From assembly GCF_001194135.2 (NCBI RefSeq), contig NC_068986.1, positions 20,321,482 through 20,385,481 of the forward strand: a stretch of 64,000 nucleotides of DNA, in the 5' to 3' direction. This stretch comes from Octopus bimaculoides (lineage: Eukaryota). This document shows positions 10,376 through 43,765 of this stretch, piece by piece. The notes beneath the pieces were generated by a model. That model was not told the DNA's origin. It was given only the letters and a program-made list of their open reading frames with translations, and did not search any database. Made by a program: the position numbers and the translations under genes. Each line of letters opens with the position of its first letter. Within the stretch, counting starts at the first letter, position 1.

Positions 10376-10540
<165 letters not shown>

Positions 10541-11467: not shown

Positions 11468-11841
11468 CTCCGTTGGTTATGAGAACGAGGGTTCCAGTTG
11501 ATCCAATCAATGGAACAGCCTGCTCCTGAAATTAATATGCAAGTGGCTGAGCACTCCACAGACACATGTACTCTTAATGTAGTTCTCAGGGAGATTCAGC
11601 TTGACACAGAGTGTGACAAGGCTGGCCCTTTGAAATACAGGTACAACAGAAACAGGAAGAAAGAGTGAGAGGAAGTTGTGGTGAAAGAATACAGCAGGGT
11701 TCGCCACCACCCCTGCTGGAGCCTCGTGGAGCTTCAGGTGTTTTTGCTCCAAAAAACATTCATAACACCTGGTCTGGGAATTGAAACCGTGATCCTATGA
11801 CCATGAGTCTGCTTCCCTAACCACTGGGCCATTGCGCCTCC
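11468..11841 (-). mobile_element. tRNA-derived SINE ('family E')
   Basis: Minus strand starts ggaggcgcaatggcccagtggttaggg (A box) ... ggtttcaattcc (B box); related copy at 15560-15835. Confidence 0.8.
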
Positions 11842-14682
11842 ACTTTAGAATAACTACACACACACATATACACACAACATACTCGATCTTACAGTGTCTC
11901 TGTTACAAACAACGGCCACATACAAATCATTCAAAATGATGCTCTCTTAATCATTGTTGAAGCAAATTGGATAATCAAATGTGATATTGGACAACCATCC
12001 CATGGGTCTTAAGTTCAAATTCACTACTGATGAAATATCTGGGCAGTGTACTTAATAAATTCTATGCACTTCAGTTTATTGAGTTGTCAGAAATTGGTAC
12101 CAGATCATATTTAGATGTAATCATATATTGGCTTAATATTATGATGCCAAACTAGACACTAGCTCTTAAAAGTTTCTAATGGCAACCAAGATATTTGAAT
12201 TTTATAGTGTAGGCTCCATGTATGTCAGACATAACAAAAGAATGTGCAGCTACATGCCTCTTTGCTTTCAGTTCAAACAGCTTTTGTAGATAGATGCACA
12301 TTCAATTACAAATACCTAAATGTTTTATAAACATTACACAATATTAGCACAGCAGCATTCTATTTGACTGAAACAATCTTAAAGCACATTTACCCCCCAA
12401 AATAATCACATCAGTTTTCTTTATTCCTTTGAATTCCGTGTTTAAGTTGCCGACATATCTAAATATATTCCAAGAAACAGAATTTAACAGGCATTGACCA
12501 AGTACATGTTGTATATGTCCATGATGACTGGTTTGACAATAAACAGATTGCAACATATTCTGACTCCTCATACCACTGCCTAATCAAACAATGTGTGTCA
12601 GTGTGTAGTACTGTGACAAATACATCCTGTATACCAAATCTGTGGCTCATCTCCAAATATTTCAGGAGCTCTCTATATCTCTTTATCTCTCTCTCTCTGT
12701 CATAATTCTGTCAGAGCTGAGATGACTCACTCTTGTGAATAACAGAATAATGCAAGCTTCCTGCTTTAATTAACAATAAAACTCATATATCATCTTTTCC
12801 TGGGAGACATAACATTTTGCTAACAGCCTTGTCCGACTGCTTTATAAGATTCACAAATATTTCAATATAATCCACTGGTATGAAGTCAGAGGATGAATAC
12901 TGAAGGTTTTCTTCAGGATTCTGTTTCTGGAGACTGTTTTTGTAACTCAAATATTGATCCTTGCCCAATCTATGTAAATAAATAACAAACATCTTCTCCA
13001 GACCATGATGTAAAAGTTATTGAACTGTCAATCTGAGTTCCTTAAACTTATATCAATTCAGAGAGAAAACTAAATGAAATGTCACCAGCATTTTATAACA
13101 GATAAACTCCATCTTTCTTTTATCAGTTCTTTTATTTATTTCCTTAAAATTTTCATTTGCTGACTGCTTTTAGAACACCTTTAGATTTGTTTTTGATAAA
13201 TTTCTTCCTGAATTTTTTTTTATATATATATATAAATGTCTTATATTTTATTTTACAATTTTTTTTTCTCCTTCCATTGAATTTCTTTCATCATATTAAG
13301 TGCTGACAGTTTATCCTTGAAAGACATCTTTTCCAATATTATAGCTGCTGTTATTAAAATATCTCTCTTTAGTCTGTTGGGTAACTCACAAATTTAAAAC
13401 AACATGAATCAGAAATAGACAAAGAAATCAATAGAAAATCATGCAATTTTCTTTGGCACATTTTGACTATTCACTCAGCTACTGTCCACTGTAAAAGTTC
13501 AAATTTTTTTTTTTTTTACATATTTCAATTATTGATCTATACGCTAATTTATTTGATTATCTCGGGATTTCCCTCTCAAAACAAAAATACCAAAATAGTC
13601 AATTGTTATAACAGTGAAAATACCTGTAACAACCATTGAGATGTGAAGAAAAACTGGAGAGAAAATAAGGAAAAATTCTTTGAGCTATCTTTAATCCTTT
13701 TGATACTAACCTGCCTATGACTGTCCCTGGTTCTATGTTACAATCTTCCAATTTTGAAGTGCTTTAAATAAAACCTTCCATCAAAATATGGTGTTAATCT
13801 TTGCTCTGAACACCAGCTTAACAATAGAAAAGTTATTTCACTAAATTCTTCAGTAATTTCAAAATTGATTGAAATAAAGACTGTCTATTTCAACAGAAAT
13901 ATGGGAACAGAAGGATGATATTGATTTGTAACTCAATGTGTTACAAACTCAAAACAGAATTGATAAAATAAGCACTAATATATTTATTGCAGTCACATTT
14001 CCCATCGTCAACAAAAGAAATGATTTCGTATTTAGTTAAAATAGAACTCAATTTTGAGCTAATTGATAATGAAATCACAGTTATCAAATTATATAGGATC
14101 AGATGTGTTGCATTACAATTTCTAATTCTTCAGCTCATATTTCTGTTGTTTGATGACACAGATGTTGGTAAAAATGAGTACCAGTAATAATATGAGTTAA
14201 ACAACCTGTGATATCTTCCCTTATCAAAAGTGCTTTAACCATTAAATAGCAGATATCATCAACTGATGCACACTTGTACAATGTGGGAATCTCAAATGAA
14301 TTTATGCTAACACTTGATATAAAGGAAAGTGAATATTTTACAGCACTTTGTGATAAGAAGATTGCAAATTTTATAATGTAAGAGATTAACAATAATTATG
14401 GTTTTTGTACTTATATAAAGTAGAAAGAAGTATAAGAACTTACCCTTAAGAAAAAGAGATTTTTGTTGTTGTTGTTGTTTTTATGTTTCACACACACATT
14501 CATGCAGCCCTTTCTTGCCATTTAAAGGTTAAGCTAGCAGAGATATAAATGATTAATATTTGATCAACTATCCATTTCATTAATAATAATAATAATAATA
14601 ATACAGTTTGATGGGTTGTAGTATTAGCATATTTCTCCTTAAAAACCATATTGCTAATTTACTACCTTTTCCTCTCCAACAG

Positions 14683-14770
14683 AGATGTCAGCTAAAGAAG
14701 GTCTGTTGTTATGGTGTCAGCGCAAAACAGCACCATACAAAAACGTCAATGTCCAGAATTTCCATCTCAG
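14683..14770 (+). CDS. ACTN: alpha-actinin exon (88 nt, exon 5 equivalent), CH2 start
   Basis: ccaacag|AG ATG TCA...CAT CTC AG|gtaagg; [30 protein letters not shown]. Confidence 0.97.
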
Positions 14771-15559
14771 GTAAGGAAATTAATCCGCTAATCAGTCTGT
14801 TTATCAATCCTCATTTTTCCTTCATTAAGATAATGTCCCAGTTGGGTGACACTATTTCAGTTAATGAATGTCAGTATTGCTGGTAACCCTTCAGTAAATA
14901 TATTTTGTTTATTCCTAAGACTAAATCATTGCTGACATCATCATTATTATTATTATTATTATCTGTGGAAATTACTCTCTCATCTCCACTGGCAGACATT
15001 TTTCTGCAGGAGAAGTCGGGAGAAGAAAACAAAAAACCGAATGAATCGCATTTAAATTATCAGTGCAGCTTCAAATCAATAAATTATATGTCTGTTATAC
15101 TGATCAGTTAAACAGCAGTTACATAATAGATATTCAGTTGTTGATTGAACTAAAGTAAACAAACCTTCTTAGTTTCTAGTTGTAATCATATACATGCTTG
15201 TCTACAACCAACCATTTCAGTCTGTGCTGAATAGATTTTCAATTTTCAGTTTATTATTACATAGAAGTCTTCTTCACTAAAGTTTGGTGAGAGAGTAAGA
15301 GTACCAGATGTTTTATATACTGGTGGCAAGTCCAGGAGTCTGAGGTTCAAGTCCTGTTCTAGATCAACTTTGATATTCTGTCTTTTGGAATAAAATCAAA
15401 TAGCTATCAATTAATCAATTTGTACAATTAATCCAATTGGGTTGCATGCTAAATTATTATGGGGCTGGTGACACTATTATTAGTAGTACAAAAAGCATTG
15501 CCCTCTAGATAGTATTTTCCTAGTTTATGTAATATATAATCATATTTTTTTGCGTATAT

Positions 15560-15835
15560 GGTTGTAAGGTTGTGAGTTCAATTCCTAGTGGAGCATTGTG
15601 TTCTTAAGCAAGGCACTTTATTTCATGTTTCTCCAATCCATTCAGCTGACAAAAATGAGTAGCACCAGTGTTTCAAAGGACCCGCTTCATTCTGTGTCAC
15701 ACTGAATCTCCTTGAGAGCTACATTAAGGGTACACATATCTGCACATTAATTTCATGAGCAGGTTGTTCCATTGATCAAATCAACTGGAACCGTCATCAT
15801 CATAACCAGTGCAGTGCCGGTTATAGGACCTCAGA
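15560..15835 (+). mobile_element. family E SINE, degraded
   Basis: Shares tgtgtcacactgaatctcc...gagcaggttgttccattgatc...actggaacc with the reverse complement of 11468-11841. Confidence 0.7.
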
Positions 15836-16547
15836 GTTTAATGTGTCCTTTCTTAAGACAGCAGAGTATGGTTTGGGTATTTATTCATTTAAGGAAGGAT
15901 TCTTTAACCCCTCCCCCACCTCCTCTAACTTTTTTATTTTAATGCCTTATTTTTCAAAAAAGCAGTCATTGATTTCTTTTGTGTTTTTAATGTGAGATTC
16001 AGAATTTGCAGAAACAAAATTTTGATTGTTTTTGAAGCCGATTTGGAGTAGAGAGAATATGTCATGAATGACGAAGTCACGAATGGCAGTGAACCTAAAT
16101 GGTTGATCGATTAACCGAACAATAAATCCAACAATCAATTAGTTAATTAGTTCAATAGTTAACAAACTGACAAACAAATAATAAAGAAGTGAAATAGAAC
16201 CAATGCATGTGTTTACTATTGGCATAATGACCCTTCTGAATCATCAAACCAATAATGACTTCACATCAGGAATCTTGCAAACCTAATTCAAAAAACAAAA
16301 CAGGAAAGTCCTTTTCAAAAACAAAAACAAAAATAATGAATCTCGTTCCAGTGTTATATGAATGTATTTATATATTAATTATGTAGAAAAATACTGTCTT
16401 GTAATGGCTGTATTAGCTCTGAAAATAACGGATGTAATGTGTATTCAATAATGGAAGTAATTAATCCTTTACTGATTGACTTTCTGAAAATATATAATGT
16501 TGTTGATTCAATTTATTAACAGCGAAAATGTAATTACAAATGCAAAC

Positions 16548-16810
16548 ATCATTACCATTCATTTAACATCCGTTTTCCATGCTGGCATGGGTTGGACAGT
16601 TTGACAGGAGCTGGCAAGCAGGTGGGCTACACTGGGCTCCAGTTGTCTGTTTCGGTATGGTTTTTATGGCTGGATGCCCTTCCTAACACCAACCACTTTA
16701 CAGAGTGCATTGGCTGCTTTTTATGTGCCACCACCATGGGTACTTTTCATGTGCCACCAGCATGGGTAATTTACATGTGGGGCCAGCACAGGTGCTTCTT
16801 ATGTGACGCC
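16548..16810 (-). mobile_element. family C element
   Basis: tttaacatccgttttccatgctggcatgggttggac...ggatgcccttcctaacaccaaccac. Confidence 0.8.
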
Positions 16811-17037
16811 CCCCCCCCCCACACTTACACAAATATTAGGTCAATGACAAGAGAACAGAAATTATGTAGCCACTTTCATTGCCCTACAGCGGTTTCTGCT
16901 ATATGGAACTGTGTGCCCAGAGTTTGAACATCGGTGTAACACCTTCATTGGTAACAACTATGATACAATCCTAAGTAAATAAAATCATAAAATATGTATA
17001 CAAAATATATAGTTATACACTTCAAATATTAACTAAA

Positions 17038-17103
<66 letters not shown>

Positions 17104-17185
17104 CATACATATATATATATGTATATATATATGTGTGTATGTATATATATATATATATAATACATGCATACACACACACACATGC
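17038..17185. repeat. compound (TG)n(TA)n microsatellite; representative of dozens of TA/TG/GA/TTA/CAT tracts
   Basis: Directly visible. Confidence 0.95.
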
Positions 17186-17752
17186 AAAAGGACTTCCTGT
17201 TTTTGTGAATGCACTCACATTAGAGAAATTCTAGAAAGCAACTCTAAATCTAAACATAAGCTAAAGACTTTTTTTTTATGGTTTAACATAAAACGTTTGA
17301 AGCAACAGGTTAAAATTCCACACTTTAAACAAATTAATGCCTAAATTTGTGATATTTTATAAGAAAGGTCAAAATAAATAAATAGTAAAATGACTTGGAT
17401 GAAAAGTTATTGAAATATGAAAGGGAAACGAAAACATTAGTGAAATAACTTTCTTTGACATCTATTGGTAAGACTGGAATACATAAATAAATAGTGAAAT
17501 AACTTTATGCAAAGGGAAATGGAGAAAGTTACTGAAATAACTTTGAAATGTAGAAAGTTATAAAATGGAGACACGTGAAAGTACTTTCATTTGCTCTCTA
17601 GAATGAGATATGTGGGTGGAAGTAACAAAGAAGTGAATTTAGGTCTAAAGATGTAGACAGAAGCGAGTCGTAGCGAATGAACGCTGTAGAAAGTGATGAG
17701 TGTTATGAGCAAAGATAGTGTTGAAAATGAAAATAAAGACAACAGTTTTATT

Positions 17753-18390
17753 AAAATATATTAAAATTGGGATTTCTACAGATTTAACCATCATATTCCT
17801 TTGACTCAAAATTTTGTTTTAGAGTTTTGGTTACATATCTAGATATACTTGCAGTAGTATCATTGCATTAAAGATTGTGAAATCTTTACAAAACTATTTC
17901 ACTTTTAAATTAAGACACATGAGATGATGCTCTGATTATGCTCTGAAAATATATTAAAATTGGGATTTCTACAGATTTAACCATCATATTCNNNNNNNNN
18001 NAAATATATTAAAATTGGGATTTCTACAGATTTAACCATCATATTCCTTTGACTCAAAATTTTGTTTTAGAGTTTTGGTTACATATCTAGATATACTTGC
18101 AGTAGTATCATTGCATTAAAGATTGTGAAATCTTTACAAAACTATTTCACTTTTAAATTAAGACACATGAGATGATGCTCTGATTATGCTCTGAAAATAT
18201 ATTAAAATTGGGATTTCTACAGATTTAACCATCATATTCCATTGACTCAAAATTTTGTTTTAGAGTTTTGGTTACATATCTAGATATACTTACAGTAGTA
18301 TCATTGTATAAAAGATTGTGAAATCTTTACGAAACTATTTCACTTTCAAATTAAGACACTTGAGATGATGTTCTGATTATGCTCTGAAAA
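17753..18390. repeat. 193-bp tandem repeat spanning a 10-N gap
   Basis: Units start at 17753, 17946, about 18001 and 18194. Confidence 0.9.
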
Positions 18391-21171
18391 TTGCTTGAGT
18401 TCCCATTGCAATTACTAGTGTACATCGTATTGGGAAGAAAACTGCTAAAAGGAAACCAGATTCACTTGTTATTCACTTGTTACTACAATGATTTTCTTCA
18501 GCAGGAAGTATTGTGATAGGGAAGTTCCTGTCGTAGCATTTAATTACTTCTGCTTTCATAGGGGCTTCGAAAATTTTACTTACAAATGTTGGCCTCTACT
18601 ACCTGCTGCTCTTATCCCATCTCTCTCTCTCTCACACATATACACACATATATATATATATTTTAGTAAGACTGCTAAAAGCAAGTAATTTGCAGTCTTG
18701 CTATTTTAAATTTTTTCTCACTGTTTTCCTATAACACATCGGCTGTCAATAATGTAAATTGCTGCTGCTGTTGTTCCATTGGAGGAGGCCTGTTACTGCT
18801 TCCACTGCATCTTTATTCTTGCTCTCTGTCATCCTCATCCTTCAGGCTCCTTTTATAGCCAATAAATGACTCAGAGGGGGGATCTTACTCATTTACTTTT
18901 CCCACTGCTTAATTTGTACATTTTCCTGCTCACTAGGTTCTTTCCAACTACTGGAAGGGAAAGGAAAGGGGAAGGAGTTTTAAACCATGGATTGAGATGA
19001 GCCTGTAACCCCATGAAACACTTCAGAGTATATTTCTTCCCCCCCCACCACCACCACCACCACTCTGCCGCCCTCTCCAACCCTTTACATTCAATATATT
19101 TCCTTTCGCTCCTGTTATCTGTGCTGCTAAAGCCAGATGATGTGGGTTAGGGTACTTATTCCTGTGAAGGTCTTTGGTGGATCAGGGAGTAACAAAAATG
19201 TAAAGATTGTTTTATTCCCCCCTCAGGGTTAAAAAGAAATTTAAAAAAAAAAATTAAAAAACAGATGGAGTAAATAAAAAAAAAAATGTGTTTAGAATAA
19301 ACTAAAAGGATAAGTGCAAAATAACAGGAATTCCTAAGTAGATAGGAATTATGAATGGAAAAAAATGTGAATGAGATATATACAGGGCTATTAACATAGA
19401 AACATATGATTGGAAGGTTATAAATATAACTGTTGTCTTAAGTCATTGGAATAATGTCAGCTATATCCTGACCATCTTAGAATAACTATAGAAAACAGAA
19501 TTCTATTTCTTTATTGACTCAGAATGAAATATTAAAATGATATTGTGATTGTGTATGTAGATAGTCTTATCATTTCATATTGTAGTTCAAATATATTTTT
19601 CTTATACTTTGTAAATAAAATATCTGACCATAGACAATTTAATTTATTTCAAGCAGATAAGGGACTTTTAGAGTTATTATTTTACCAGTTTAAAAACATG
19701 CATCAGTAAATCTATATTATACAATTTTGACCTTTTTTATAATACATTTATATGCACATATTTTGTATGTAGCCATAGAAAGTGGTTCACTATGATATTT
19801 GGTAGACCAAATACCATATGAATAAGGTTAGATTTTTATGCTACAAGTAATCAATTTATTGATTTTTATACATTTACTTACATACTGTTTTTTAATTGTA
19901 GAGAAAATTAATCATAACATATTGGTGAAGAAAATTGAAGTTTATTGAATCTAAATTTAAATGTATTTTAAAATTCCACTTATGTTTCAGGTTTGTCCCT
20001 ACTCTCCAAAAATGTGTTATGGAGTGAGATAGTCTGTTAACATGTTTTCTTCACAATATCTCTATCTGCTTATAACGCTTCCATATTCTAAGAATGTTCA
20101 CAGCGGTGACAGAATGCAAAACCACTAAGAGAACTTCCTTGTTAATTCTTTAACCTGCTAATATAGCAACATGTCTCTTCAAGCTAAACTGTCTAGAAGT
20201 TTTTTTTTAAGAAGTCCTAAATGTTAACACATTCAAAATAAATTTTAATTTAATGCTAACCATATGCATATATAGTGAAGTGAGTCCATGGATCACTTTG
20301 TAGCATTCTATTATGTGGTCACATTAAAGTACATTGAGTACAATACATCTGCTCAAGTAAAGCAGATTAAAGCTGGTCTTTAGCATTGTACAGTAATGTC
20401 TTCAATATTGTGTACTGAAAAGTGTAAATCTTAATCTCATGAATAGAACAAGATTATTCTATTACAGGTAAGATTTAAATAATATATGGAGTCAGAAAAC
20501 TTTGCGGCTATCACAGAAAGCTCCTTTTACAGTCTCGGCTAACAGTCTACAAAGTGATCTAATACAGAGAAATGTAATGTAGAGTGTCCATGCATCTCAG
20601 ATCCAGGAGATGCAATCAATGAAATTACTTCATGAGGATTATATACACCATAAAAATTCAAGAGCTATATTTATATAGCATTTGATGAGATGTGTCCATC
20701 AAACTTTGTCATGTGGTGTTAAGTCAAACTGTTAGTGTGTGTGTGTGTGTGAGGTAGCTGACCAAGATTGGAAGATCATGGATTCAATTACTAAATCAGG
20801 AAGTGAGCAAACCAATTCATTTTTATGTTGCTGCAGTTCACTCAGCTGTAAATGGCTAACTCTGCGACAGACTGGTTTTCCATTCTGTGGAGGTGGGCGA
20901 CAATGGCCTGTCCACCTCCCCAACCAGGTGGCATCATTTAAAAGCTACAGCAGTGCAAAGGTGTGCATTGTGACCAGTGCTATATACCAACATCTGATAG
21001 CCTGGCTGATACTGTGAGAGTGACGTAGAACTCAATACACTGGGTTGAAAATATTCTCGAGTCACATCTAAAAAAAATTTTTATGATTATTTTGAACAGG
21101 TTTTTTGTTTTGTTGTTTTTTTTTTGTTTTTTTTGCTTTTGGTATTTTTAAAAACTTATCATTTGGCACAT

Positions 21172-21550
21172 GAGTGGCTGTGTGGTAAGTAGCTTGCTTA
21201 CCAACCACAAGGTTCCAACTTCAGTCCCACTATGTGGCACCTTGGGCAAGTATCTTCTACTATGGCCTTAGGCCGACCAAAGCCTTGTGAATGGATCTGG
21301 TAGATAGAAACTGAAATAAGCTCCTCATATATATATATATATGTATGTATGTATGTGTTTGTCCCTCCAGCATTGCTTGACAACCGATGCTGGTGTGTTT
21401 ACATCCCCGTAACTTAGCAGTTCAGCAAAAGAGACTGATAGACAGAGACTAGGCTTACAAAGAATAGGTCCTGGGGGCGATTTGCTCAACTAAAGGCACT
21501 GCTCTAGCATGGCCACAGTCAAAATGACTGAAACAAATAAAAGAAAAAGA
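21172..21550 (+). mobile_element. full-length family A SINE
   Basis: Collinear with 7154-7580. Confidence 0.9.
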
Positions 21551-22580
21551 ATTAGATCCATTTGTACTCATCTCCAAATATGCCCTATTTGAAAGGTCTC
21601 ATAGCTTTCTTTATATAACATTTTTTAACACTAGAGACTGTTCCTTCTATCATCATAGTCTCTTACATTATTCAGTTAATGCTGCTTGTGTCGAAAGCTG
21701 GCAGAAATGTTAGCATACTGGGTAAAATGCTAAGCAGTATTTCATCTATTTTTATGTTCTGCCCCCCCCCCCCTCCTAAAAAATTTTCGGGCCTTGTGCC
21801 TACAGTAGAAAAGAATGTTGCATGTGTCTCTTATTTCAACTCCCCCCCCCNNNNNNNNNNNNNNNNNNNNNNNNNNNNNNNNNNNNNNNNNNNNNNNNNC
21901 CACCACCACACACACTTATCATCTGAGTGGTTCCCCACAGGAAAAAACAACCTGCTGGGAAAATAATTGCTCTAAAAAATAAAAAATTAAATAAACAGTT
22001 CACTCATTTAAGTGCAGAAATATTGATGTTGAAGAAACACACAAAAATGAAAAATAAATATCTGCTCCTCCAAATATATGCATAATCTAATGATTTTAGT
22101 TAAACCTCTAATGACATTCTATATAGTAACGCCTCGTTATATGTACTTTACTTTAAACTAGTATTTTCCACCGGTCAGCTCCTTATATGTCATTCAGTTT
22201 TTTTTGTTTTTTTTTGTTTTTTGTTTTTTTTTGGCAGAATCTAGACCAGATGCTTAGTAGCATTTCTTCTGGCTTTTTACATTCCAAGTTCAAATGTTGC
22301 CGACGTTGATTTGCCTTTCATCCTTGCAGGTTCTATAAAATAAATACCTGTCAAGCACTGCATTTGGTGCGATTGACTAGCCCCTCTGCCAAAAAAAAAA
22401 AAGGCGAAAGTAAAGAAAGAAAAGAAAAATTGCATAAGACAGAATTTCATTTTAATACTTTGAACCAGAAGCTCTTTATACCATTGCTATCCGCTTGTGT
22501 GGTTTTTTAAATTTTTATTATTATTATTATTATAAATTGTTTTATAAAAATTGCATAAATGTATATTTATCATATTACAG

Positions 22581-22659
22581 CTGGAAGGATGGTCTGGCTT
22601 TCTGTGCCCTGATCCACAGACATCGTCCAGAACTGCTGGATTATTACAAACTCACCAGG
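22581..22659 (+). CDS. ACTN: alpha-actinin alternative exon 6a (79 nt), CH2
   Basis: attacag|C TGG AAG GAT...ACC AGG|gtaaat; (S)[26 protein letters not shown]. Confidence 0.93.
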
Positions 22660-23232
22660 GTAAATCAATCTAAAAGAGTTCTCTGCAAGTTATCACTGTT
22701 GAGCTGATAACAATAAACTCCGTTTTGTCACCCTCACGTTGTCCAACTTGTTGCCACCCATCTATTTGTTGTCTGACCAGTGCTTTACTTATGCTGCTCA
22801 CACAAACACTATCTAACTGAGCAAGTTTTGGCAGTTTATAGAATAAAAAAATGATAATTAAGAGACATAAAAAGATAATTATTTTCTCTATTCTTTTTTT
22901 AACTTCTATCATTCTTCTCCCTCAGAATCATTTTCTCTCAGTCTGACATATCACTGGCAAGAAACGCCAGAAGTGAAATGAAATTTCATTTGTTTTGTTG
23001 TTTACTTACACATATAGAGAAAATAACATATCAAGTTTTTCTTGAAGAAAAAAAAAACTGCCAGAACTTGCTTCTTTTGGTGACGGTGCTAAATCCTTAC
23101 TACCTGACACTCTCTTCTTTTATTTCTTCTCTATCTATTTAATATCTGGTGTCTGTCTGTTCAGGAATGCTAACTCTCCGTTGAGCAACTCATCAAAATG
23201 CATGTATTGTATGTTTCTTTGTCTTTCTACAG

Positions 23233-23311
23233 CTTTAAAGATGGCTTGGCCTTCTGTGCACTGATTCATCGGCACCGGCCAGATTTAATTGATTACCACA
23301 AATTGTCCAAG
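23233..23311 (+). CDS. ACTN: alpha-actinin alternative exon 6b (79 nt), CH2
   Basis: tttctacag|C TTT AAA GAT...TCC AAG|gtgagt; (S)[26 protein letters not shown]; missed by the ORF track. Confidence 0.93.
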
Positions 23312-24156
23312 GTGAGTGTAGTGTAGAGTAGCAGTTAGCGACAACCAAAATTGTTTTCATTTCTATCATTTTTATTTTTTTAGTTTACTATAGAAACTAT
23401 ATCAGGTTACTGTAGTCTAGGGCTGTTTTTTTTTTTAATAAAAAGGAAGTGGTGCAAAAATATCTGCAGCAATTAAAGTGTGTGCCCTATTTTTACAATA
23501 AGCTAGTCAGACGAAATTCGGTTACGTACTATTATAATAATGATAATAATTAAAGGTTGAGCAATGACTTTGGGGTTGTCTTGCCAGCACTCCTTTCAAT
23601 AATAATCTGCTCAAGGCAACCTGTGTTATAATTTTATTAAAATTCCAACTGAAATCTGCTTATTACAAGAATGTTAACAAAAGATTTCAGTAAGCAAACA
23701 TTTTCCTCATATTTTGATTTTCATGTAAAAGCTCTTTGTGTTCCTAGGTCACTGTGAGAGCCTTGATATGGCTGTTTTACTTGCTAGAAATAGCAGCCGA
23801 ACTTCTACCATCTTATAAAGAACACATTGGCTACTGTTGTCCAGAGTACACTATTCTTTAAGAAATATATCAATAGTATACTTTTGTTAGAAATATGGTA
23901 TATGAAAGTCATAAACTGAGGCTAACATAGTAAGTTCAAGGCCTAGCATCTTAAAGATGAGGTGATAAAAACTATACCTATACTATTACCTAATTAAAAC
24001 CATCATTTATTGTTTCTATGTAATTGGTGTAACTACACTTACACTTTCTAAGTTTTTCATTCTACTCTGGACTTTATTAGCAGTTTTAAAGAATATAATT
24101 TATCCTCCAATTTTGTTTTAACAGCAGTTTAGCTTTTAGTATACTTTGAAGAAGCT

Positions 24157-24188
<32 letters not shown>

Positions 24189-24408
24189 ATGTGTATATTA
24201 TAATGTCAGAAGACTTTAGAAACTTCAGAGACATGAAATAAATTGCTTTTAATGGTAGAATCTGAAGTAGATAAAGCTATAAATAAAAGCATGTAGATCA
24301 CTGGATTAAAAAGAGGAGCCTGAATCCCACAGGCAGTTTTTGACTTTTCCATCTAAGGGTTTTTTTTTAAAACCAATATTTACATGCTTTTATTTATTTT
24401 TACATATG

Positions 24409-24453
<45 letters not shown>

Positions 24454-26550
24454 CAACAGAAACGGTATTAATACTAAAAGGTAATCTCGATCTCCAACTG
24501 AATGTGGAGGTTGTGTTAGTATACAGAATACTGTGTTATTTACCTGGAGGGAATCCCTTATAAAAACTAGTAGTACATAAAAGCACTTATAAATGTATCA
24601 TTGACAGAAGAGAGCCGTCTGCTGTGGCTCCGATCATGGGATTTCACCCTGCCATGGGTTCTTCAGTGACAGATGTCCTGCAGTGGCATAACATCCAAAT
24701 TTCCCATCAACGATGTATAGAATAACAGTGCTGTACACATACACACTATATCTTCAGATAGTTACAAGTGTATTTTGACCATGTTCTTTATACATAAGAA
24801 CAGCTGAAGCAGCTTACCTGAAATAATCTTCAGTCATGTCTTTTCTATTTTAGAGCAGACAGTAAATTCATCATACTTTTGCCCCCATTATGCTAAGGTT
24901 GTCTCCAGTTGTTATACTGTGTTTAAAAGTCAGCTTAGAAATCTCTCATATTGTTGTTGAATATATTTGAAATCTCTTCTCAATGGAAATATATTTTATT
25001 ATCAGCCAAATAGTCCTTCTTAAAATGTTCTTTCCATCATTTCTCTTGGCCTTGAGGAGGGAAATGCTAACTAACATGTACTATGTTACATTAGTCAACA
25101 AAATATTAACTACTAAAATGACATTTACTAAGTCTTAGCAGTTGAATTCTAATCTTCGACATACTGTTGAAGAATACTGCAAAACTAGTGTTGTAATTAC
25201 CACACGTGACTGCTGCTATAATGTTAGCTACATGTTAAAGTAGCTTTACTGATATATGAGCAACTTTAATCATTAGTATGACTATCTTTAATGTAGTACA
25301 CTACTGGTACACTGTGGTTCACCATTGACCTACTTTTTTTGTTGGAGCATCGTTTTCTCAAGATTAATTAACTATAATTGCTTATTCTGTAAAGACTTTA
25401 TCTGTTTTACTTCTGTCTTTCCATGTTAGCATGGGTCGATTGGAGACTTATACTTCAGTTTTATAATCATCTGACAGAAGTCTTAGACACAGTATTTAGT
25501 TGCTATTTCACTGTTTGGTATATTTTCAACATGGTGTTTAGGCTTGAAGTGCTCTCAGTTTCCTTTCACTTAATTTAACATCATTTAGCAGAAGTCTTAA
25601 GTACCTCAATTTGGAGAAACTGGAATCAAATTTTTCATTTAATGGAAAGTAAAAGTACCACATGAAAATACGACACAGTACTTCAGTTAGTTTTCATGTT
25701 TGATATGCACAACATACTACATAGAGATCTATCACATCCTGCCATCTTACTTTAGGTTTTAGTTCTGGTCTCATAGCCATCATCCTGGAAGATGTATCCT
25801 TTCAAGAATCACTAGTGTAAAAATTCACATCTTCAGAGAATCTCTAGAATAATTGGATTTCTTCAGAATAAAATAACAGTAATAAAGTTGTCACAAGTTT
25901 AACTAATCAAATTGAAGTTTTGTTCATAGGACATCATACTTAGTTATCAAGAAAGCTGCCTTAAAGGTAATAACATACCTTCACAAGGTGTATAATTCTT
26001 AAGTGTGTATGCTGTGACCTGTTAACGGAAGGTAACAAACTCTTCACAACAAAATACATCCACTATTACTGCATGTCATATAACTAGCTTCCGTGAAAAA
26101 TCTTTCTTGTTGGTGGCCTTACATGACTTTACATAATTCACTTGTATATTTATTGAACACTTATTGCTGTTGTTTTTGTTGTTGCTTGAATTTTCTAACT
26201 TTTGTTAAAAATATCAAGTTTATGTACGTTTACAAGCCATACATGTCAGAATTAAATATTCAAATATTTAGCTTAATTTAGTGTTATTACTATTAGATTG
26301 GTTTTATTTTGGAGTATATGGGAGAAACAAATAATTGCTCATTTAGGACCTAAATATTTCCATTATAATTTTGATTAATCCCTCTGCAAAAAAAAAAAAA
26401 AATTCCATTTTATTCTTGTCTCTAGACCAGTTTAGAGTTACCCTCTCCTCTTCCAGTCAATATACTGTATTTTCTCTTTAATGATGTTTGGTACCTGCAG
26501 AAGAAATAAGAATTTCATCTTTCACTTATAAACAGAAGCGTTGCCCTATA

Positions 26551-26697
26551 CAGGCATGGGCAACTTTTCATGAGAATCGAGCCACATGAAACATGGCTTG
26601 TTATTTTGTGAGCTACACTACTAAAAAACATTCAAGGTAATTTTTTGTTAGTTGTGTCATTCAGGAGGTCCCATAGGCTTCTGGTTGCCCATGACTG
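26551..26697. mobile_element. hAT-type MITE (147 bp)
   Basis: 14-bp TIRs CAGGCATGGGCAAC / GTTGCCCATGACTG (1 mismatch); no clean 8-bp TSD. Confidence 0.7.
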
Positions 26698-27449
26698 ATA
26701 TATAATGAAAATTAGTCAGCATTTAGTGCAGTTAATTACAACTTTATATTAATAGTCTCCTCCTACATGTCTTATTACTTGGAAAGGACTGGAGGGGTGT
26801 CTTCTAAATACTTATGCCCAGTAACAACTAATCTGTGTCAAAACAACTTATACCTGTCCTGTCTCCCTGCAACATAAGATCATTTATAGTTTAACCTCAC
26901 CAACCAATGTGACATTTACACTTTAGAATTTTAATACTCTCTGCAAGGATTATAGCAACCAAACAGTCTAGGATTAAAGAGAGGAAGAGGAACAAAACGA
27001 AAAAAAAACAAAACGAAAATCCCCACAAGTATCCAGCTGATTTTCATTTAATATATACTTAATCCCTTCTCTCACTATTCTTCTAGTCATCTTTTGCTTG
27101 GTTTAGGTTGTTAAGCTAAAACTTTGTTATTTTTACAATAGGTGTAGTTGACAGCTGTGTTTTCAGTAGCCCTTAGCTTAACTTTTTAGTTTGTTTTTTG
27201 TTTTTTTCATATTATTATATTTTATTTATTTAGTTATTTCTTAGTTTTGTAAGCATTGTAAATTGTATCTAAATGCACTGCTCCCCACTCTCTACATCCA
27301 CATAGTAATAATCTTTGTTGTCATCTGCTGTTCGGCTGCAACAAATATACACCACCGAGGATGGTCTGACGGTGTACTACCATTTTTCTACTCGGAATGA
27401 ATGATTGCATTTTAATGATGTAATCCGACACTTGATAGATCTGTTATTC

Positions 27450-27735
27450 TTTTACTTGTTCCAATCATTGGAAACAAATAAAAGTGGCCATGCTGGAGCG
27501 CTGCCTTGAAAAGTTTAGTCAAACAAATTGACTCTGGTACTTTTTCTGGCAATCTCTTTAGTTAAGTGATGGGGATGTAAACTAACCAGTGCTGGTTGTC
27601 AAGCAGTGGGGAGCACAAACACAAAAACCCACATACACATATATGGTGGGCTTCCACATAGTTTTCATCTGTCAAAGTCACTCTTGGGGCACTGGTCAAC
27701 CTGGAGCTATAGTTAGAAGATACTTACCCACATGG
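27450..27735 (-). mobile_element. family A SINE, degraded
   Basis: Reverse complement of family A tail and body (gtggccatgctggagc...ggggatgtaaac...gctatag..agaagatacttaccc). Confidence 0.7.
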
Positions 27736-28567
27736 TTAAATGAGTAGTTATCAATCATAGAAACCAGTCCAAAATTGGAGTGTATGAGTTAGACATAGTC
27801 CTCCATCCCATCTAAGCTGGTAGTAACTATGAATAAGGCAATGTGTTCAACCCATGCCGGGTGGACATGCTGACATGTGCTGGATGAGCCATCATGAGCA
27901 AATCAGTTCTTATTCAGGTCTACTGTCCTCCTTGATGAGTCAGGGATCATGACTCTCACGTGTTCTATTTTTAACTTGTCTTCTTCTGCTGGATGCTTTT
28001 TTTCTGTTGCCAATGGCTACATTTCATAATTGCCCCCAGCACTAGAAAGTTACCTTATTTCTGGCAGATAGAAGAGAGAATAATGAAAAGGGATTAGAGC
28101 AAGAGAGGGAGAGAGAGAGATGATGAGGAGGAGGAGAATATTAAAGGAGAACTAGTGTACTAAGAGTGGGAGGATGATAAACAGAAGAGTATAAGCAAGA
28201 GAAAGTGACAGACAGCTACATGATGATTATTGGTAAGGAGGTTCAATAGGAAAGCATGAGAAGCATGATGAGGGAAGAAAGAGTGAGAGGAGGGAGAGGG
28301 TAATGAAAGCAGAAATACTGGAGGTGGGGAACGGGAGTGAGAGTGATGGATGTTGATAAGTGACAAGAAAGGAGTGTGTGTGTGATTATACATTGACTCT
28401 CTCATTTGTCACTCATATATAATGTATATTTATATTTGGGTTTGTGTGTATGTATCAAATTTGAATCCTGTTTTGATCCATATTTCTATATGTATATATA
28501 TATATATATATATAATTAAGGTGGCTATCAGCAATTCAAAACCAAGGAAATGATTCACCATCACGAA

Positions 28568-28676
28568 GAGCACCAGCATTGCTAGAAATAGGAGTCATAG
28601 ACTCCTTAGCCTTGAGATCATGTGCTTTTTGTGGCTAAGAAGTCTATGACTCCTATTTCTAGCAATGCTGGTGCTC
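28568..28676. repeat. 44-bp inverted repeat, 21-nt spacer, one mismatch
   Basis: Arms 28568-28611 and 28633-28676 checked base by base. Confidence 0.95.
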
Positions 28677-29380
28677 ACTGCACCCTTGTCACTCTTAGTG
28701 ATGTTGAATTATAAATATATACTGGTAAAAGAGAATAAAAAAGGCTTATACAACCATCTTTGAACACCCAAGTAAAATTAATTGAGCTGAAATTCTCAAC
28801 ACCTAGAAATGACGATGATGATGTATGTTCTGTTTAAGTCTCAATCAATTGTCAGTCGTTGCATGTTGCCTTCTCCTCAACCAAGCCTGTAGTGTAGTTT
28901 TGTGTTTGCAATTTTCTCTCTGAATGTCCTTGCTGTTGTCTCTCTAACCATTCAGTATTGTTACTAAACTCAACTAACTTGTTTGTTGTTACTCACTCCA
29001 TTAATGCTTGTTTCTTTGATACTATTAAAAACTCTTGTTTTCTTTTTTTCTCTATTTCTTTCCTTTCCTTTAGTCATTTATTTATTTTTTCTCCTTTTCT
29101 TTTATTTCTCCAATCTGTTTCTCCTTGATGTAAATATGTTGATGTTACTCTCTTTCTAAGGCAAGACATTTGTTTTGATTTCAACTAAGTAATTACGATA
29201 AAAAAAGATATATACTCCCCGTTTCATTAAGTTGAGTTAGAAGTTGACAATGATGCAAGTAACAATTTCAGTTCACCAAACTTTAGTGTTTGCACTTCGA
29301 CAAGAACAAAAAGGAAAAAAAAAAAAAAGCGTTTGATTTGGTCATGGCACTTGACTCCTCTTATACACAATGTTTTAAAC

Positions 29381-29460
29381 CAGGGGCTGGGGAAACCCCT
29401 GCCCATGGGCGCAACTGCGCCCACGAGCCTGTTTTATTGTGCCCGCAGGCTGATATACTC
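29381..29460 (+). mobile_element. hAT/Charlie-like left end
   Basis: CAGGGGCTGGGGAAAC followed by GC-rich gcccacgagcc/gcccgc subterminal motifs; right TIR not found. Confidence 0.5.
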
Positions 29461-31089
29461 ATATGTACAAAATATAGTAAATTTTGCAATCAAAATTTAT
29501 TCAATATTCGTATACTTATTTGAGACATGGGTCGTGTTTCCAATACAACTTAAAATGGTCAGGAATCATCCGGTAATTGCCATTTGAATGGAAATTTTGT
29601 TTTCACTGTAAAATATATTGCTAGGTTTATACCACCCCCTTGAGACCCAATTACACTTTAGCTGAAAAATGTAGAATACCTCTTAAGTAATATAAACATC
29701 GTAAATTCAGTGGTGGCTTTAATGAAGATGGTACACATTAATTTGATGTGTTAAACTTATGTTTATTAATGTATATCAAATTATACATAGATATATACAA
29801 GATTTACACAGGTATAATTGAACCTGTGATCCACCCATGGATCTTTTTCTTAAGAAATTTTTGCCCGCTGCAACATTGTTTTTCTTTCAATTAACTTCAA
29901 AAATAATGAAGAATAGAGAAAATTACTTCATCATTATTAACCTGAAGTTTGGAAAATAATTTTATATGAAATTTTGATAGGAAGTTTTTATTTAGATCAC
30001 TTTAAAACAGGAAATCTGTATCATAAAAATAAGGGCAGTTACAGTCAGTTTGGTATGAAAAGGGTGAAATGAAGAACCAAAGTTAAGTAATAGTTTATTG
30101 CCCAGAACATAGTAGAAAGATTATTTGATGTAAGTGATAAATTCTTTGATGTAATGCTTATGTATTCATGAAACAATCTGAATAAATAAGCATTACATTT
30201 GACGGAATAATCTTAATGCTAAAGGGTTAGTATGAAGGAAATGGCTTTTAGACAGTCATTTATTTTACACTATTCTTCTCTCTTCAGGCAGTTTGGTAAA
30301 AATTAAAAAAAAGTCCAGTTTTTTTTACTGGGATTTACTGAAACTCCTGTCTTTCTGTATTCTGTTTCCTATCGCTAGATTTCTGGGAAAATACAGTCTG
30401 GTTATTTAATTTACTCCTGTTAACAAATTTGAAGTTTTTGCCTCTATTTTAAAATAGCTTCCAAATAAATTATTTCACCAGATGTTAAAGAATGGAAAAC
30501 GAGTGTAGGGGAAGAGGGAGATATGACTATTTGAAGATTTCTGAAAACTTCTGTTGCAGAGTTCTATCAAAAGAAGGAGTGGCAATTCAATTCAGCCAAC
30601 TGAAATTGAGAAGCTCATTATAAGAAATTTAGGTTTATTGGTTATTTTTGAATGAACCTTATTCTGTCAGGTTTCCAGCTGGGAAAACAACTTGATCACT
30701 GATATTCCTTAAATTAGAAATGCTATTTAACTTGGTTATTGTCATTTTCATCATCATCGTAAAACCTTTACAAAACTACCATTGTGATGTAGAAACACAG
30801 TAAAAGAAATGAGGTTTCTAATAAGTTGTCCTTCTTGTCTAATTATATACAATTGGGTCTTCTATTAGTTGTACCATTTGGTATAAATAGAGACAGAGAC
30901 CTAACACACATAGAACAGTCACAGCCTGTAAAATTACCTGGACAACACAGTTTGACTAGTTCCAACCTGCCTGATTTAAAATTGGTCTGAATGATCAATA
31001 CATACTAGATGACCGAGTTTTAAGGTGGTCAGCTAACCAGCTAAACAATTGATAGTTCATATTCCATCATCATTGATGGTCTAGGACAT

Positions 31090-31460
31090 CATCATCCTCA
31101 TCTTAACTGTTTTCATGTCCACTTTTCCATGGAGCTATTGAAGCAGGTTTTCAACAGCTGGATGCACCTCCTGTCACCAACCCTCACCTGTATCCAAATA
31201 AAGTGATATTTCCCATTTGTCAGACAGGTTTTCCCAGAATGACATTAAGTCTCCTTGTCTTGACATCACATCAAGTGTCCCCATACACAAGCAGTATCAT
31301 TCATTTCCAATGTTCTGTGAAAACATATCAGGCCATGGGGAAATATTACCATGCTTGGAAACAGGGGAAGGCTAGAGACAGGAAGGACATCTGACCATAG
31401 AAATTCTGCCCTCGATAAACACCATCCAGCCCATGCAAACATGGAAAAATGGATGTTAAA
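31090..31460. mobile_element. two family D SINE bodies in inverted orientation
   Basis: About 31090-31265 minus and about 31270-31460 plus; roughly 70-75% identical by eye. Confidence 0.7.
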
Positions 31461-31809
31461 AACCGTCATTGTTGGGTTAATAGATCACTATGTTACAGAT
31501 GGTTTTGATCAAAACTAATTAGGGATTGACAATAACGATAAGCTGATACCCTTATCAAAAGCAATACACAACTGATAATGAATATTCCCAGTAGAAGAAA
31601 CTTACCCATGATGCAATACAAACTGATAGTCTAGTTATTTCATTGCCATAAAATTGGCTTTCATCTCTATACTGAATATTATTAGTTTTATTAGAAGTTA
31701 TAGGAATTCAAATCAAAGGAACGATGCTTTCATTCATCCTTGTTGAGCAGAAAGATAGATCTCCTATCAACATAGAATGTTTGTTAGTGTATTTGCCAAT
31801 GTGAAGAAT

Positions 31810-32559
31810 ATACATATATGTATGTGCATATATATATAATATATATATATGTATGTGTATATATATGTATGTATATGAATATATATATGTATGTATATAT
31901 ATATATATATATGTACATATATATGTATATATATATATATGTACATATATATGTATATATATATATATGTACATATATATATGTACATATATATATGTAT
32001 ATATATATATGTACATATATATGTACATATATATGTTTATATATATATATGTACATATATATGTACATATATATGTATATATATATATATGTACATATAT
32101 ATGTATATATATATATATGTACATATATATGTACATATATATGTATATATATATATATGTACATATATATGTATATATATATATATGTACATATATATGT
32201 NNNNNNNNNNNNNNNNNNNNNNNNNNNNNNNNNNNNNNNNNNNNNNNNNNNNNNNNNNNNNNNNNNNNNNNNNNNNNNNNNNNNNNNNNNNNNNNNNNNN
32301 NNNNNNNNNNNNNNNNNNNNNNNNNNNNNNNNNNNNNNNNNNNNNNNNNNNNNNNNNNNNNNNNNNNNNNNNNNNNNNNNNNNNNNNNNNNNNNNNNNNN
32401 NNNNNNNNNNNNNNNNNNNNNNNNNNNNNNNNNNNNNNNNNNNNNNNNNNNNNNNNNNNNNNNNNNNNNNNNNNNNNNNNNNNNNNNNNNNNNNNNNNNN
32501 NNNNNNNNNNNNNNNNNNNNNNNNNNNNNNNNNNNNNNNNNNNNNNNNNNNNNNNNNAT

Positions 32560-32591
<32 letters not shown>

Positions 32592-32755
32592 GTACATATA
32601 TATGTATATATATATATATGTATATGTATATATATATATGTATATGTACATATATATGTATGCATACATATATATGTATGCATATATATATATGTATGCA
32701 TATATATATATGTATGCATATATATATATATGTATGCATATATATATATGTATGC

Positions 32756-32786
<31 letters not shown>

Positions 32787-32790
32787 TACA
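31810..32790. repeat. complex AT minisatellite [GTAC(AT)n and ATGC(AT)n units] around a 357-N gap (32201-32557)
   Basis: Directly visible; source of the spurious long ORFs. Confidence 0.95.
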
Positions 32791-33038
32791 TTTTTTTTTC
32801 TTCAGTCTGTCACCAGAATACAAAGCCATATGTTGTGGGCTACACTGTCTATTATCGTCTATTATAGTGTTAAATCTCCATTATTATACACAATATTTAA
32901 ATGTATTTTTACAGAAGAGAAAAAAAAAATTGTAAACCTCTTATCTGTTCATTGATTACATAATTAATGCTGTCCATTTTTAGTAAATGAGGTGCCTATT
33001 GTTATTATTCACAATATAGACTACTCTTTCTCTCTCTT

Positions 33039-33085
<47 letters not shown>

Positions 33086-33096
33086 TACTCCTTCTG

Positions 33097-33130
<34 letters not shown>

Positions 33131-33684
33131 GAAATTATTACTTGCAATTATATCTACTTAACAAGTGTCTTGCCCTTGCATTTGTAATGCTATTGAATTC
33201 CATGTTTCATTTTACACAAGAAAGAAAAAAAGTAAATAAATAAATAAGACTTGATATGGTAACTCATTTTGTAAAGCTGACTACTTCTAAAGAAACCTCC
33301 TTCAAAGTTGTTCTTTGATGAGGTGCTCATGTTGTTGTTTTATTTCATTTAAGACATCACTTGTTTTTTTCTGATGGATGCTGCTCTCTGACAAGCAACC
33401 ATGTTTGGAAGAGATGAAAGTAAACTTTATGGCAATGAAATAACAGCGCCATCCTTTACCATCGCTGCTGCTATGACTGCAATAACGGTCAGAGAGATGA
33501 TTCTGGTGAACATTAAATGTAGTAGTATCATTGTCTCTTTATAACGTAAAGCATTTATGAAAGAATCCAGATTTGTATCACTGTGTCATTGACATGGAAA
33601 TTCTAAAGCAGCACATTTATAGTTACCATATCAAGTATCAACAACACCCTGTATCAGGATTTGTAATTTTATTTAATATTTTGT

Positions 33685-33717
<33 letters not shown>

Positions 33718-36418: not shown

Positions 36419-36465
<47 letters not shown>

Positions 36466-43721: not shown

Positions 43722-43765
<44 letters not shown>

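What the first reader, a model, noticed from the sequence alone, without database searches (positions are those of the whole stretch)
22581..23311. Tandem duplicated, mutually exclusive CH2 exon (6a/6b) in alpha-actinin
Seen: two 79-nt exons 573 nt apart with the same phases (2 in, 0 out) and canonical splice sites. They encode (S)[26 protein letters not shown] and (S)[26 protein letters not shown]. They differ at 24/79 nt but only 6 residues, and 13 of the 20 same-residue codons differ synonymously, pointing to an old duplication with both copies under purifying selection. Using both reads AGG|CTT TAA (stop at 23236). Skipping both reads AG|G ACA ATC CAC TGG AGA ATT TGA in exon 7. Only one-of-two makes protein. 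Known: the familiar actinin switches are exon 8 and EF-hand exon 19, and this CH2 segment carries part of the PIP2-binding surface (IHRHRP). From recall, 6a has the vertebrate-type W and 6b the fly-type F. Inference: a tissue-specific isoform switch in the actin-binding domain. I do not recall an exon-6 switch being described but cannot confirm novelty.
Basis: partly seen in the sequence, partly recalled or inferred. Interest (0 to 1): 0.85.

Follow-up and report, generated by a model that had tools for sequence, protein, structure and literature searches.

The report
Alternative exon-6 pair in octopus alpha-actinin
The octopus alpha-actinin gene carries two interchangeable copies of one 79-base exon in its actin-binding domain. 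The pair is real and at least as old as the common ancestor of molluscs, annelids and bryozoans, but both protein forms are already in the public RefSeq annotation and their tissue use could not be tested here.

Summary
Two 79-nt exons (22581-22659 and 23233-23311) have the same phases and AG/GT borders. They differ at 24 nt and 6 of 26 residues. Using exactly one keeps the reading frame; using both or neither gives an early stop.

The window is the Octopus bimaculoides alpha-actinin gene. RefSeq already lists isoform X1 (XP_014779444.1, exon 6a) and X2 (XP_014779445.1, exon 6b), which differ only at those six residues. Octopus sinensis has the same X1/X2 pair. Argonauta hians has a 6b model.

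The same a-then-b exon pair, 79 nt with intact splice sites, is present in a chiton, two annelids and a bryozoan. A hemichordate and a mite have one copy. Octopus 6a and 6b are each closer to their counterparts in other phyla than to each other, so the duplication is ancient. 6b resembles the single-copy form.

Both forms occur as mRNA-length assemblies in bivalves. Every cephalopod transcript assembly I found carries 6a.

This is a different exon from the known actinin switches at exon 8 and exon 19. I found no paper describing it.

The parts
10446..61199 (+). The part of the Octopus bimaculoides alpha-actinin gene that lies in the window, from the exon encoding (E)IVDGNVKM to the stop codon. 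The N-terminal exons lie upstream of the window.
   Evidence: tblastn exon map. The assembled model is 100% identical to XP_014779444.1. Pfam finds CH x2, Spectrin x4 and EF-hand domains.
14683..14770 (+). Exon 5 (88 nt), constitutive. It encodes [29 protein letters not shown](S) and ends in phase 2.
22581..22659 (+). Exon 6a (79 nt), residues 171-196 of isoform X1: [26 protein letters not shown]. The acceptor region is A/T-rich and the nearest upstream AG is 109 nt away. The donor is AGG|gtaaat.
   Evidence: It is used in XP_014779444.1 and in all cephalopod transcript assemblies found.
22660..23232 (+). The 573-nt intron between the two alternative exons. It has GT..AG ends and is long enough to be spliced. 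A long-range stem is predicted between 22820-22837 and 23055-23072.
   Evidence: fold z = -2.6. No comparative support was available for the stem.
23233..23311 (+). Exon 6b (79 nt), residues 171-196 of isoform X2: [26 protein letters not shown]. It has a better pyrimidine tract and a consensus donor, AAG|gtgagt. It begins C TTT AAA, which reads CTT TAA if it is joined to 6a.
   Evidence: It is used in XP_014779445.1. The peptide is identical in O. sinensis X2 and Argonauta hians X2.
34872..34953 (+). Exon 7 (82 nt), constitutive: [27 protein letters not shown]. It contains the out-of-frame TGA that is met when both exon 6 copies are skipped.
37560..37645 (+). Exon 8 (86 nt), single copy here: [29 protein letters not shown]. 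This is the exon that is alternative in arthropods and in vertebrate ACTN2/ACTN4.
   Evidence: Searches show no second copy in the window. One search shows arthropod isoform pairs that differ in this exon.

Best explanation
Exons 6a and 6b are an ancient tandem duplication of the alpha-actinin exon that encodes the second helix of CH2 and the segment after it. They are spliced so that one of the two is used. The result is two 888-residue alpha-actinins that differ at six positions: W/F171, E/D187, L/I189, Y/H192, T/S195 and R/K196.

Shown: the exon anatomy; the reading frame allows only one of the two, because double inclusion or double skipping puts a stop inside CH2; both single-exon isoforms are annotated; the pair is conserved in order, length, phase and splice sites across molluscs, annelids and a bryozoan; both forms exist as mRNA-length assemblies in bivalves.

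Inferred: frame-shifted products are removed by nonsense-mediated decay; the choice between 6a and 6b is regulated by cell or muscle type; 6a is the major form in cephalopods; the switch tunes regulation of the actin-binding domain through residues next to the PIP2 platform and the CH2 surface, not through the PIP2 arginine itself. 6b is close to the single-copy form of outgroups. 6a (W..YYKL[ST]R) is the derived lophotrochozoan form.
For: Sequence anatomy and frame logic. Gene identity and isoforms: X1 and X2 differ only at residues 171, 187, 189, 192, 195 and 196 in O. bimaculoides and in O. sinensis, and Argonauta X2 carries 6b. W-type/F-type isoform pairs that match outside exon 6 (0-2 mismatches in the 400 flanking residues compared) occur in Gigantopelta, Sinanodonta, Ostrea, Mytilus, Haliotis and Ruditapes. 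mRNA-length Logan contigs carry the F form (P0152 Mytilus-like; P0167 and P0170 Ruditapes-like) and the W form (P0130, P0140). Genomic pairs with 79 nt and AG/GT borders are present in Liolophura, Capitella, Owenia and Watersipora, while Ptychodera and a mite have a single copy. Cross-phylum residue distances are 1-3 for 6a against other a copies and 1-2 for 6b against the annelid b copies (4 to the bryozoan and 6 to the chiton b copy), versus 6 between 6a and 6b. Synonymous sites are saturated and pN is 0.14. Exon 6 lies inside the Pfam CH2 match, residues 143-248. Octopus residue n equals human ACTN2 residue n+9. PMC4259493 maps PIP2 binding to ACTN2 165-181 plus R163/R169/R192.
Against: There is no direct read-level evidence for 6b splicing in any cephalopod. 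Two protein searches aimed at 6b fragments found no cephalopod hit, and a metagenome scan found none either. All six full-length cephalopod transcript assemblies carry 6a. The RefSeq X2 models are automated predictions. 6b has the stronger-looking splice signals yet appears to be the minor form, which is unexplained. The six substitutions are conservative and no functional data exist.
Confidence: 0.8

Rival explanations
1. In octopus, 6b is a silent relic. The X2 models would then be artefacts of homology-guided annotation, and only 6a is ever used.
For: Every cephalopod transcript assembly recovered uses 6a. No 6b-containing cephalopod fragment was found.
Against: 6b keeps an open frame, the exact 79-nt length, a good pyrimidine tract and a consensus donor. 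Its 26 residues are identical in O. bimaculoides, O. sinensis and Argonauta. It differs by one residue from the Owenia b exon despite saturated synonymous change. b-type mRNAs exist in other molluscs. Owenia shows what a decayed copy looks like: an in-frame TGA and diverged residues.
Confidence: 0.07
2. The pair arose several times independently in molluscs, annelids and bryozoans, or has been homogenised by gene conversion. It would then not descend from one ancestral lophotrochozoan duplication.
For: Other exons of the same domain have clearly duplicated independently: exon 5 in Owenia and Watersipora, and exon 8 in Owenia and arthropods. Within-species a/b distances are small in Capitella (2 residues) and Owenia (3 residues, pS only 0.49). 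Twenty-six residues carry little phylogenetic signal. Both Watersipora copies end in R.
Against: The order is the same in all five lineages, with the a copy upstream. Shared diagnostic states are a terminal R (AGG|gt) in the a copy against K (AAG|gt) in the b copy, except in Watersipora, where both copies end in R; Y22 in the a copies of molluscs and Owenia; and W1 in the a copies of molluscs and the bryozoan. Octopus 6a and 6b are each nearer to copies in other phyla than to each other.
Confidence: 0.15
3. The main role of the pair is quantitative control rather than two proteins. Regulated double inclusion or double skipping would make stop-containing transcripts that lower alpha-actinin output.
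For: Both non-productive combinations give stops within a few codons. The 573-nt intron is long enough to be spliced, so co-inclusion is physically possible.
Against: Purifying selection acts on the amino-acid sequence of both copies across phyla. Full-length mRNAs of both single-exon forms exist. Neither is expected if one copy were only a poison exon.
Confidence: 0.08

Closest known systems
Exon 8 mutually exclusive pair of vertebrate ACTN2/ACTN4 and of Drosophila and other arthropod Actn (non-muscle versus muscle isoforms)
   Same: It is in the same gene family and the same domain (CH2 end of the actin-binding domain). It is the same kind of event: tandem-duplicated exons used one at a time. 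In Drosophila it gives non-muscle and muscle isoforms (PMC2289344; PMC4550062; PMC8373072, which cites Lek et al. 2010). Arthropod isoform pairs differing in this exon are visible.
   Different: It is a different exon. The homologue of exon 8 in the window (37560-37645) is single copy. The octopus pair lies two exons upstream. The clade differs too: lophotrochozoans rather than arthropods and vertebrates. Owenia has both events.
Exon 19a/19b (EF-hand, calcium-sensitive versus insensitive) of chordate ACTN1/ACTN4
   Same: It is a mutually exclusive tandem exon pair in alpha-actinin that gives tissue-specific isoforms (PMC4550062; PMC9741552).
   Different: [quoted passage not shown] No duplicate of the EF-hand exons exists in the window.
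RefSeq models XP_014779444.1 and XP_014779445.1 (O. bimaculoides alpha-actinin, sarcomeric, isoforms X1 and X2)
   Same: They are identical to the two products deduced from the window. X1 uses 6a and X2 uses 6b.
   Different: They are automated predictions without a published description. I found no paper that cites them.

Membership tests
alpha-actinin (spectrin superfamily) | Two N-terminal CH domains, four spectrin repeats and a C-terminal EF-hand (calmodulin-like) domain | tested here: met
   Pfam on the matching RefSeq protein finds CH x2, Spectrin x4, EF-hand and EFhand_Ca_insen. The window model is 100% identical to XP_014779444.1. Human ACTN2 structures match at E 1e-149.
Tandem-duplicated mutually exclusive exons | Adjacent homologous exons of equal length and equal phases with their own splice sites | tested here: met
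   79 nt each, phase 2 in and phase 0 out, AG/GT borders, 77% residue identity, 573 nt apart.
Tandem-duplicated mutually exclusive exons | Mature mRNAs contain exactly one of the two | tested here: inconclusive
   Only one-of-two keeps the frame. Annotated isoforms and transcript assemblies each carry exactly one. No read-level junction counts were possible.
Tandem-duplicated mutually exclusive exons | Both copies conserved in orthologous genes | tested here: met
   Pairs are present in a chiton, two annelids and a bryozoan and in many mollusc isoform sets.
Mutual exclusion by steric hindrance (intron too short, or branch point too close to the upstream donor) | Intervening intron below about 60 nt, or a distant branch point with a long AG-free zone reaching the upstream exon | tested here: not met
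   The intron is 573 nt and the nearest AG upstream of the 6b acceptor is only 47 nt away. By contrast, the Owenia exon-5 pair has a 40-nt spacer.
Mutual exclusion by incompatible U2/U12 splice sites | One exon flanked by U12-type signals (/[AG]TATCCTT donor) | tested here: not met
   The donors are gtaaat and gtgagt, and both acceptors are cag. All are U2-type.
Mutual exclusion by competing intronic RNA pairings (docking and selector sites) | Conserved complementary intronic elements that pair in mutually exclusive ways | tested here: inconclusive
   Candidate pairings exist at 22820-22837/23055-23072 and 22954-22974/23567-23587, and the intron fold has z = -2.6. No second cephalopod locus could be fetched to test conservation.
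ACTN exon 8 switch | The duplicated exon is the one encoding D[IM]VNT.KPDE..MTYVS..YHAF | tested here: not met
   That exon (37560-37645) has no second copy in the window.

The most novel reading that the evidence does not exclude
Lophotrochozoans have their own ancient, so far undescribed actin-binding-domain switch at exon 6. It predates the mollusc/annelid/bryozoan split. It would play the tissue-specific role, for example muscle versus non-muscle or between muscle types, that exon 8 plays in arthropods and vertebrates. That would make the CH2 domain of alpha-actinin a repeated target of mutually exclusive exon evolution, at exons 5, 6 and 8 in different lineages.
Probability: 0.45. Interest if true: 0.55.

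Novelty: new member of a known kind. Interest (0 to 1): 0.4.

Why it matters
Alpha-actinin is a textbook case of isoform switching by mutually exclusive exons, and the cases I found described are exon 8 and exon 19. An exon-6 pair conserved across at least three lophotrochozoan phyla shows that the same small domain was diversified repeatedly, at different exons in different lineages. It also offers a natural six-residue variant next to the PIP2 platform, which can be used to probe how CH2 tunes actin binding. For octopus biology it marks two alpha-actinin forms that may distinguish muscle or cell types. For annotation it explains faulty gene models that fuse both copies.

Tried and rejected

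2. Cephalopod genomic comparison failed. The O. vulgaris, O. sinensis and Argonauta genes span 118-150 kb and no DNA was returned. The Ostrea and Lingula proteins were not on record.

3. Searches for cephalopod 6b transcripts found none. A 140-aa query and a 333-aa query returned only other taxa. Exact 6b+exon 7 peptides in P0013, P0014, P0040 and P0041 proved to be arthropod-type genomic ORFs (ISVEEMT..MLDPD). The metagenome scan gave no cephalopod locus.

4. Weak exon-5-like and exon-7-like hits just downstream of 6b (23631-23754) are chance. They show no nucleotide similarity above shuffled controls.

5. My first hand reading of the exon 18/19 junction suggested a non-canonical intron. The real sequence has a normal CAG|GAT acceptor.

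6. An RNAduplex script with shuffles timed out. I replaced it with the repeat finder and strand folding.

7. Literature: ten searches found no description of an exon-6 switch. Lek et al. 2010 (Mol Biol Evol 27:773), the key survey, is not held, so I cannot exclude that it mentions the pair.

Full report
**Observation**

Exon 6a is 22581-22659 and exon 6b is 23233-23311, both on the + strand. Each is 79 nt, preceded by ..cag and followed by gt.
- The exons encode [26 protein letters not shown] and [26 protein letters not shown].
- They differ at 24 of 79 nt and 6 of 26 residues. Thirteen of the 20 identical-residue codons differ.
- Translating the four possible splice products shows that 5-6a-7 and 5-6b-7 stay open. 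5-6a-6b-7 stops at CTT TAA (23236-23238). 5-7 stops at ...ATT TGA in exon 7.
- A self-search with every exon peptide finds only this pair (E = 6e-13). No other exon of the gene is duplicated in the window.
- Nei-Gojobori gives pS 0.89 (saturated) and pN 0.14 between the copies.

**What the locus is**

tblastn with an alpha-actinin sequence maps exons on the + strand from 10446 to the stop at 61199. The assembled model is 100% identical to XP_014779444.1, 'alpha-actinin, sarcomeric isoform X1 [Octopus bimaculoides]'. RefSeq also holds isoform X2, XP_014779445.1.
- X1 and X2 are both 888 residues and differ only at W/F171, E/D187, L/I189, Y/H192, T/S195 and R/K196. That is exactly 6a versus 6b.
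- O. sinensis X1 and X2 show the same six differences, and Argonauta hians 'X2' carries 6b.
- So the isoform pair is already in public annotation, although only as automated models. I found no paper that cites these accessions.

**Distribution**

Among the 120 best full-length relatives, many molluscs have paired isoforms that match outside exon 6 (0-2 mismatches in the 400 flanking residues compared). One carries a W-type exon (W...YYKLSR) and the other an F-type exon (F...[HSNY]KLSK). Examples are Gigantopelta, Sinanodonta, Ostrea, Mytilus, Haliotis and Ruditapes. The Nucella and Tegillarca models wrongly run through both copies, which shows the tandem arrangement there too.

Genomic loci that could be fetched:

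| Species (locus) | Group | a copy | b copy |
|---|---|---|---|
| Liolophura sinensis (L001) | chiton | 30310-30387 | 30945-31022 |
| Capitella teleta (L002) | annelid | 6545-6622 | 6927-7004 |
| Owenia fusiformis (L003) | annelid | 33160-33237 | 34348-34425 |
| Watersipora subatra (L004) | bryozoan | 19088-19165 | 20219-20296 |

Every copy is 79 nt with AG/GT borders, and the a copy is always upstream. The hemichordate Ptychodera has one copy. The mite Dinothrombium has one copy, fused to exon 5.

Residue distances:
- Octopus 6a is 1-3 residues from the a copies of the chiton, annelids and bryozoan.
- Octopus 6b is 1-2 residues from the annelid b copies and 3 from the single Ptychodera exon, but 4 from the bryozoan and 6 from the chiton b copy.
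- 6a and 6b differ from each other by 6.

The simplest reading is one duplication before the mollusc/annelid/bryozoan split. 6b is close to the single-copy form and 6a is the derived form. Twenty-six residues are few, and the small a/b distances in Capitella and Owenia leave room for gene conversion or repeated duplication. I put about 0.7 on a single origin.

**Expression evidence**

Indirect evidence comes from mRNA-length assemblies: 3-6 kb contigs with an uninterrupted 888-residue ORF, from genes that are split into many exons. They exist for the F form (P0152 Mytilus-like; P0167 and P0170 Ruditapes-like) and for the W form (P0130 Sinanodonta-like; P0140 Ostrea-like).

In cephalopods, all six full-length transcript assemblies carry 6a. 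These are P0124, which is close to Argonauta, and the P0125 cluster, which includes P0246 seen on 57 contigs. No 6b-containing cephalopod fragment turned up.

6a is therefore probably the major cephalopod form. 6b use in octopus rests on the RefSeq models and on conservation: its 26 residues are identical in Octopus and Argonauta, and it differs by one residue from the Owenia b exon despite saturated synonymous change. Owenia also has a third copy with an in-frame TGA and diverged residues, which shows what a decayed copy looks like.

**How exclusivity works**

Shown: the 79-nt length makes any product other than one-of-two frame-shifted, with a stop inside CH2. Removal of those products by NMD is inferred.

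| Mechanism | Result |
|---|---|
| Steric hindrance | Does not apply: the intron is 573 nt and the nearest AG upstream of the 6b acceptor is 47 nt away |
| U2/U12 incompatibility | Does not apply: all signals are U2-type |
| Competing RNA pairings | Undecided (see below) |

For RNA pairings, the intron folds somewhat better than shuffles (z = -2.6), with a long-range stem at 22820-22837/23055-23072. A weaker pairing (22954-22974/23567-23587) brackets 6b. No second cephalopod locus was available to test conservation.

6b has the better pyrimidine tract and a consensus donor (AAG|gtgagt). 6a has an A/T-rich acceptor region with a 109-nt AG-free zone and the donor AGG|gtaaat. If 6a is really the major form, 6b is probably actively repressed in most tissues. 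That is inference.

**What the switch could change**

Exon 6 lies inside the second CH domain (Pfam CH match, residues 143-248). Alignment to human ACTN2 structures gives octopus residue n = ACTN2 residue n+9. The variable positions therefore correspond to ACTN2 W180, D196, I198, S201, N204 and K205.

PMC4259493 places the original PIP2-binding peptide at ACTN2 165-181, on the loop between the first and second CH2 helices. It places the arginine platform at R163, R169 and R192.
- W/F171 therefore sits at the end of that peptide.
- The arginine that aligns with R192 (octopus R183) and the whole IHRHRP motif are identical in 6a and 6b.
- Five of the six changes cluster in residues 187-196, just after that motif.

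Nothing here tests it.

**Comparison with known switches**

- Human exon 8 encodes DIVNTARPDEK...; I matched it to exon 8 from my own recollection of the published ACTN4 variant residues N248, A250 and S262. Its homologue in the window is 37560-37645 and is single copy.
- Arthropod isoform pairs differ in that exon. This matches the Drosophila non-muscle/muscle isoforms described in PMC2289344 and the ACTN2/ACTN4 event shared with Drosophila in PMC8373072, which cites Lek et al. 2010.
[quoted passage not shown] No EF-hand exon is duplicated in the window.

The octopus pair is therefore a third, separate event in the same gene family. Ten literature searches found no description of it. Lek et al. 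2010 could not be read, so prior description cannot be ruled out.

**Verdict**

The reading as a mutually exclusive exon pair is well supported by anatomy, annotation and deep conservation. Tissue specificity and functional effect are untested.

It is a new member of a known kind (tandem mutually exclusive exons in alpha-actinin). It is already present in RefSeq models but apparently undescribed in the literature. Interest is moderate. The main added value of this check is that the pair is conserved across at least three lophotrochozoan phyla, and that the CH2 domain has acquired such pairs repeatedly, at exons 5, 6 and 8 in different lineages.

Noticed in passing
L003 (Owenia fusiformis) 28396-28484 and 28524-28612: Exon 5 of alpha-actinin is also duplicated in tandem. 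The two copies are separated by a GT..AG spacer of only 40 nt, too short to be spliced, so the two copies would exclude each other sterically.
   Followed up: partly
L003 32691-32768: A third exon-6 copy lies upstream of the a/b pair. It has intact AG/GT borders but an in-frame TGA and diverged residues (FQDGLAFTALINIH*PELLDYDKLKK). It is either a decayed copy or a possible poison exon.
   Followed up: no
L003 37255-37341 and 37966-38052; L007 (Dinothrombium) 3479-3565 and 3716-3802: Exon 8 is duplicated in the annelid Owenia as well as in the mite, so Owenia carries three separate duplicated-exon clusters in the CH2 region (exons 5, 6 and 8).
   Followed up: partly
L004 (Watersipora subatra) 15920-16006 and 16278-16361: The bryozoan also has a tandem pair of exon 5, about 270 nt apart. 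Both copies have splice-site-like borders.
   Followed up: no
Proteins P0126 (Nucella lapillus), P0208 (Tegillarca granosa), P0196 (Dinothrombium), P0197 (Trichonephila clavata): These deposited gene models include both copies of a mutually exclusive exon in one protein: exon 6 in the two molluscs and exon 8 in the two arachnids. These are annotation errors caused by the tandem pairs.
   Followed up: partly
window 10470 onward (RefSeq X3, P0243): RefSeq also lists a 769-residue isoform X3 that starts at MTLGMIW and lacks most of CH1. It uses 6a. Whether it is real or a model artefact was not examined.
   Followed up: no
window 22820-22837 / 23055-23072 and 22954-22974 / 23567-23587: Complementary segments lie inside the 6a-6b intron (18 nt, 94%) and bracket 6b (21 nt, 76%). 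The intron folds with z = -2.6. These are possible splicing-control structures, with no comparative test.
   Followed up: partly
window 2488-2500, 7993-8094, 17992-18001, 21851-21899, 32201-32557, 39679-39797, 63235-63244: These are runs of N (assembly gaps), mostly next to TA/CA microsatellites. The gap at 21851-21899 lies in the intron about 700 nt upstream of exon 6a.
   Followed up: no
window 60334-60555 (+): A 74-residue ORF lies in the last intron (..CGRSYKGETCRPLKIRVDEHRK..). It looks like a mobile-element fragment, but it has no Pfam match at E <= 0.01.
   Followed up: partly
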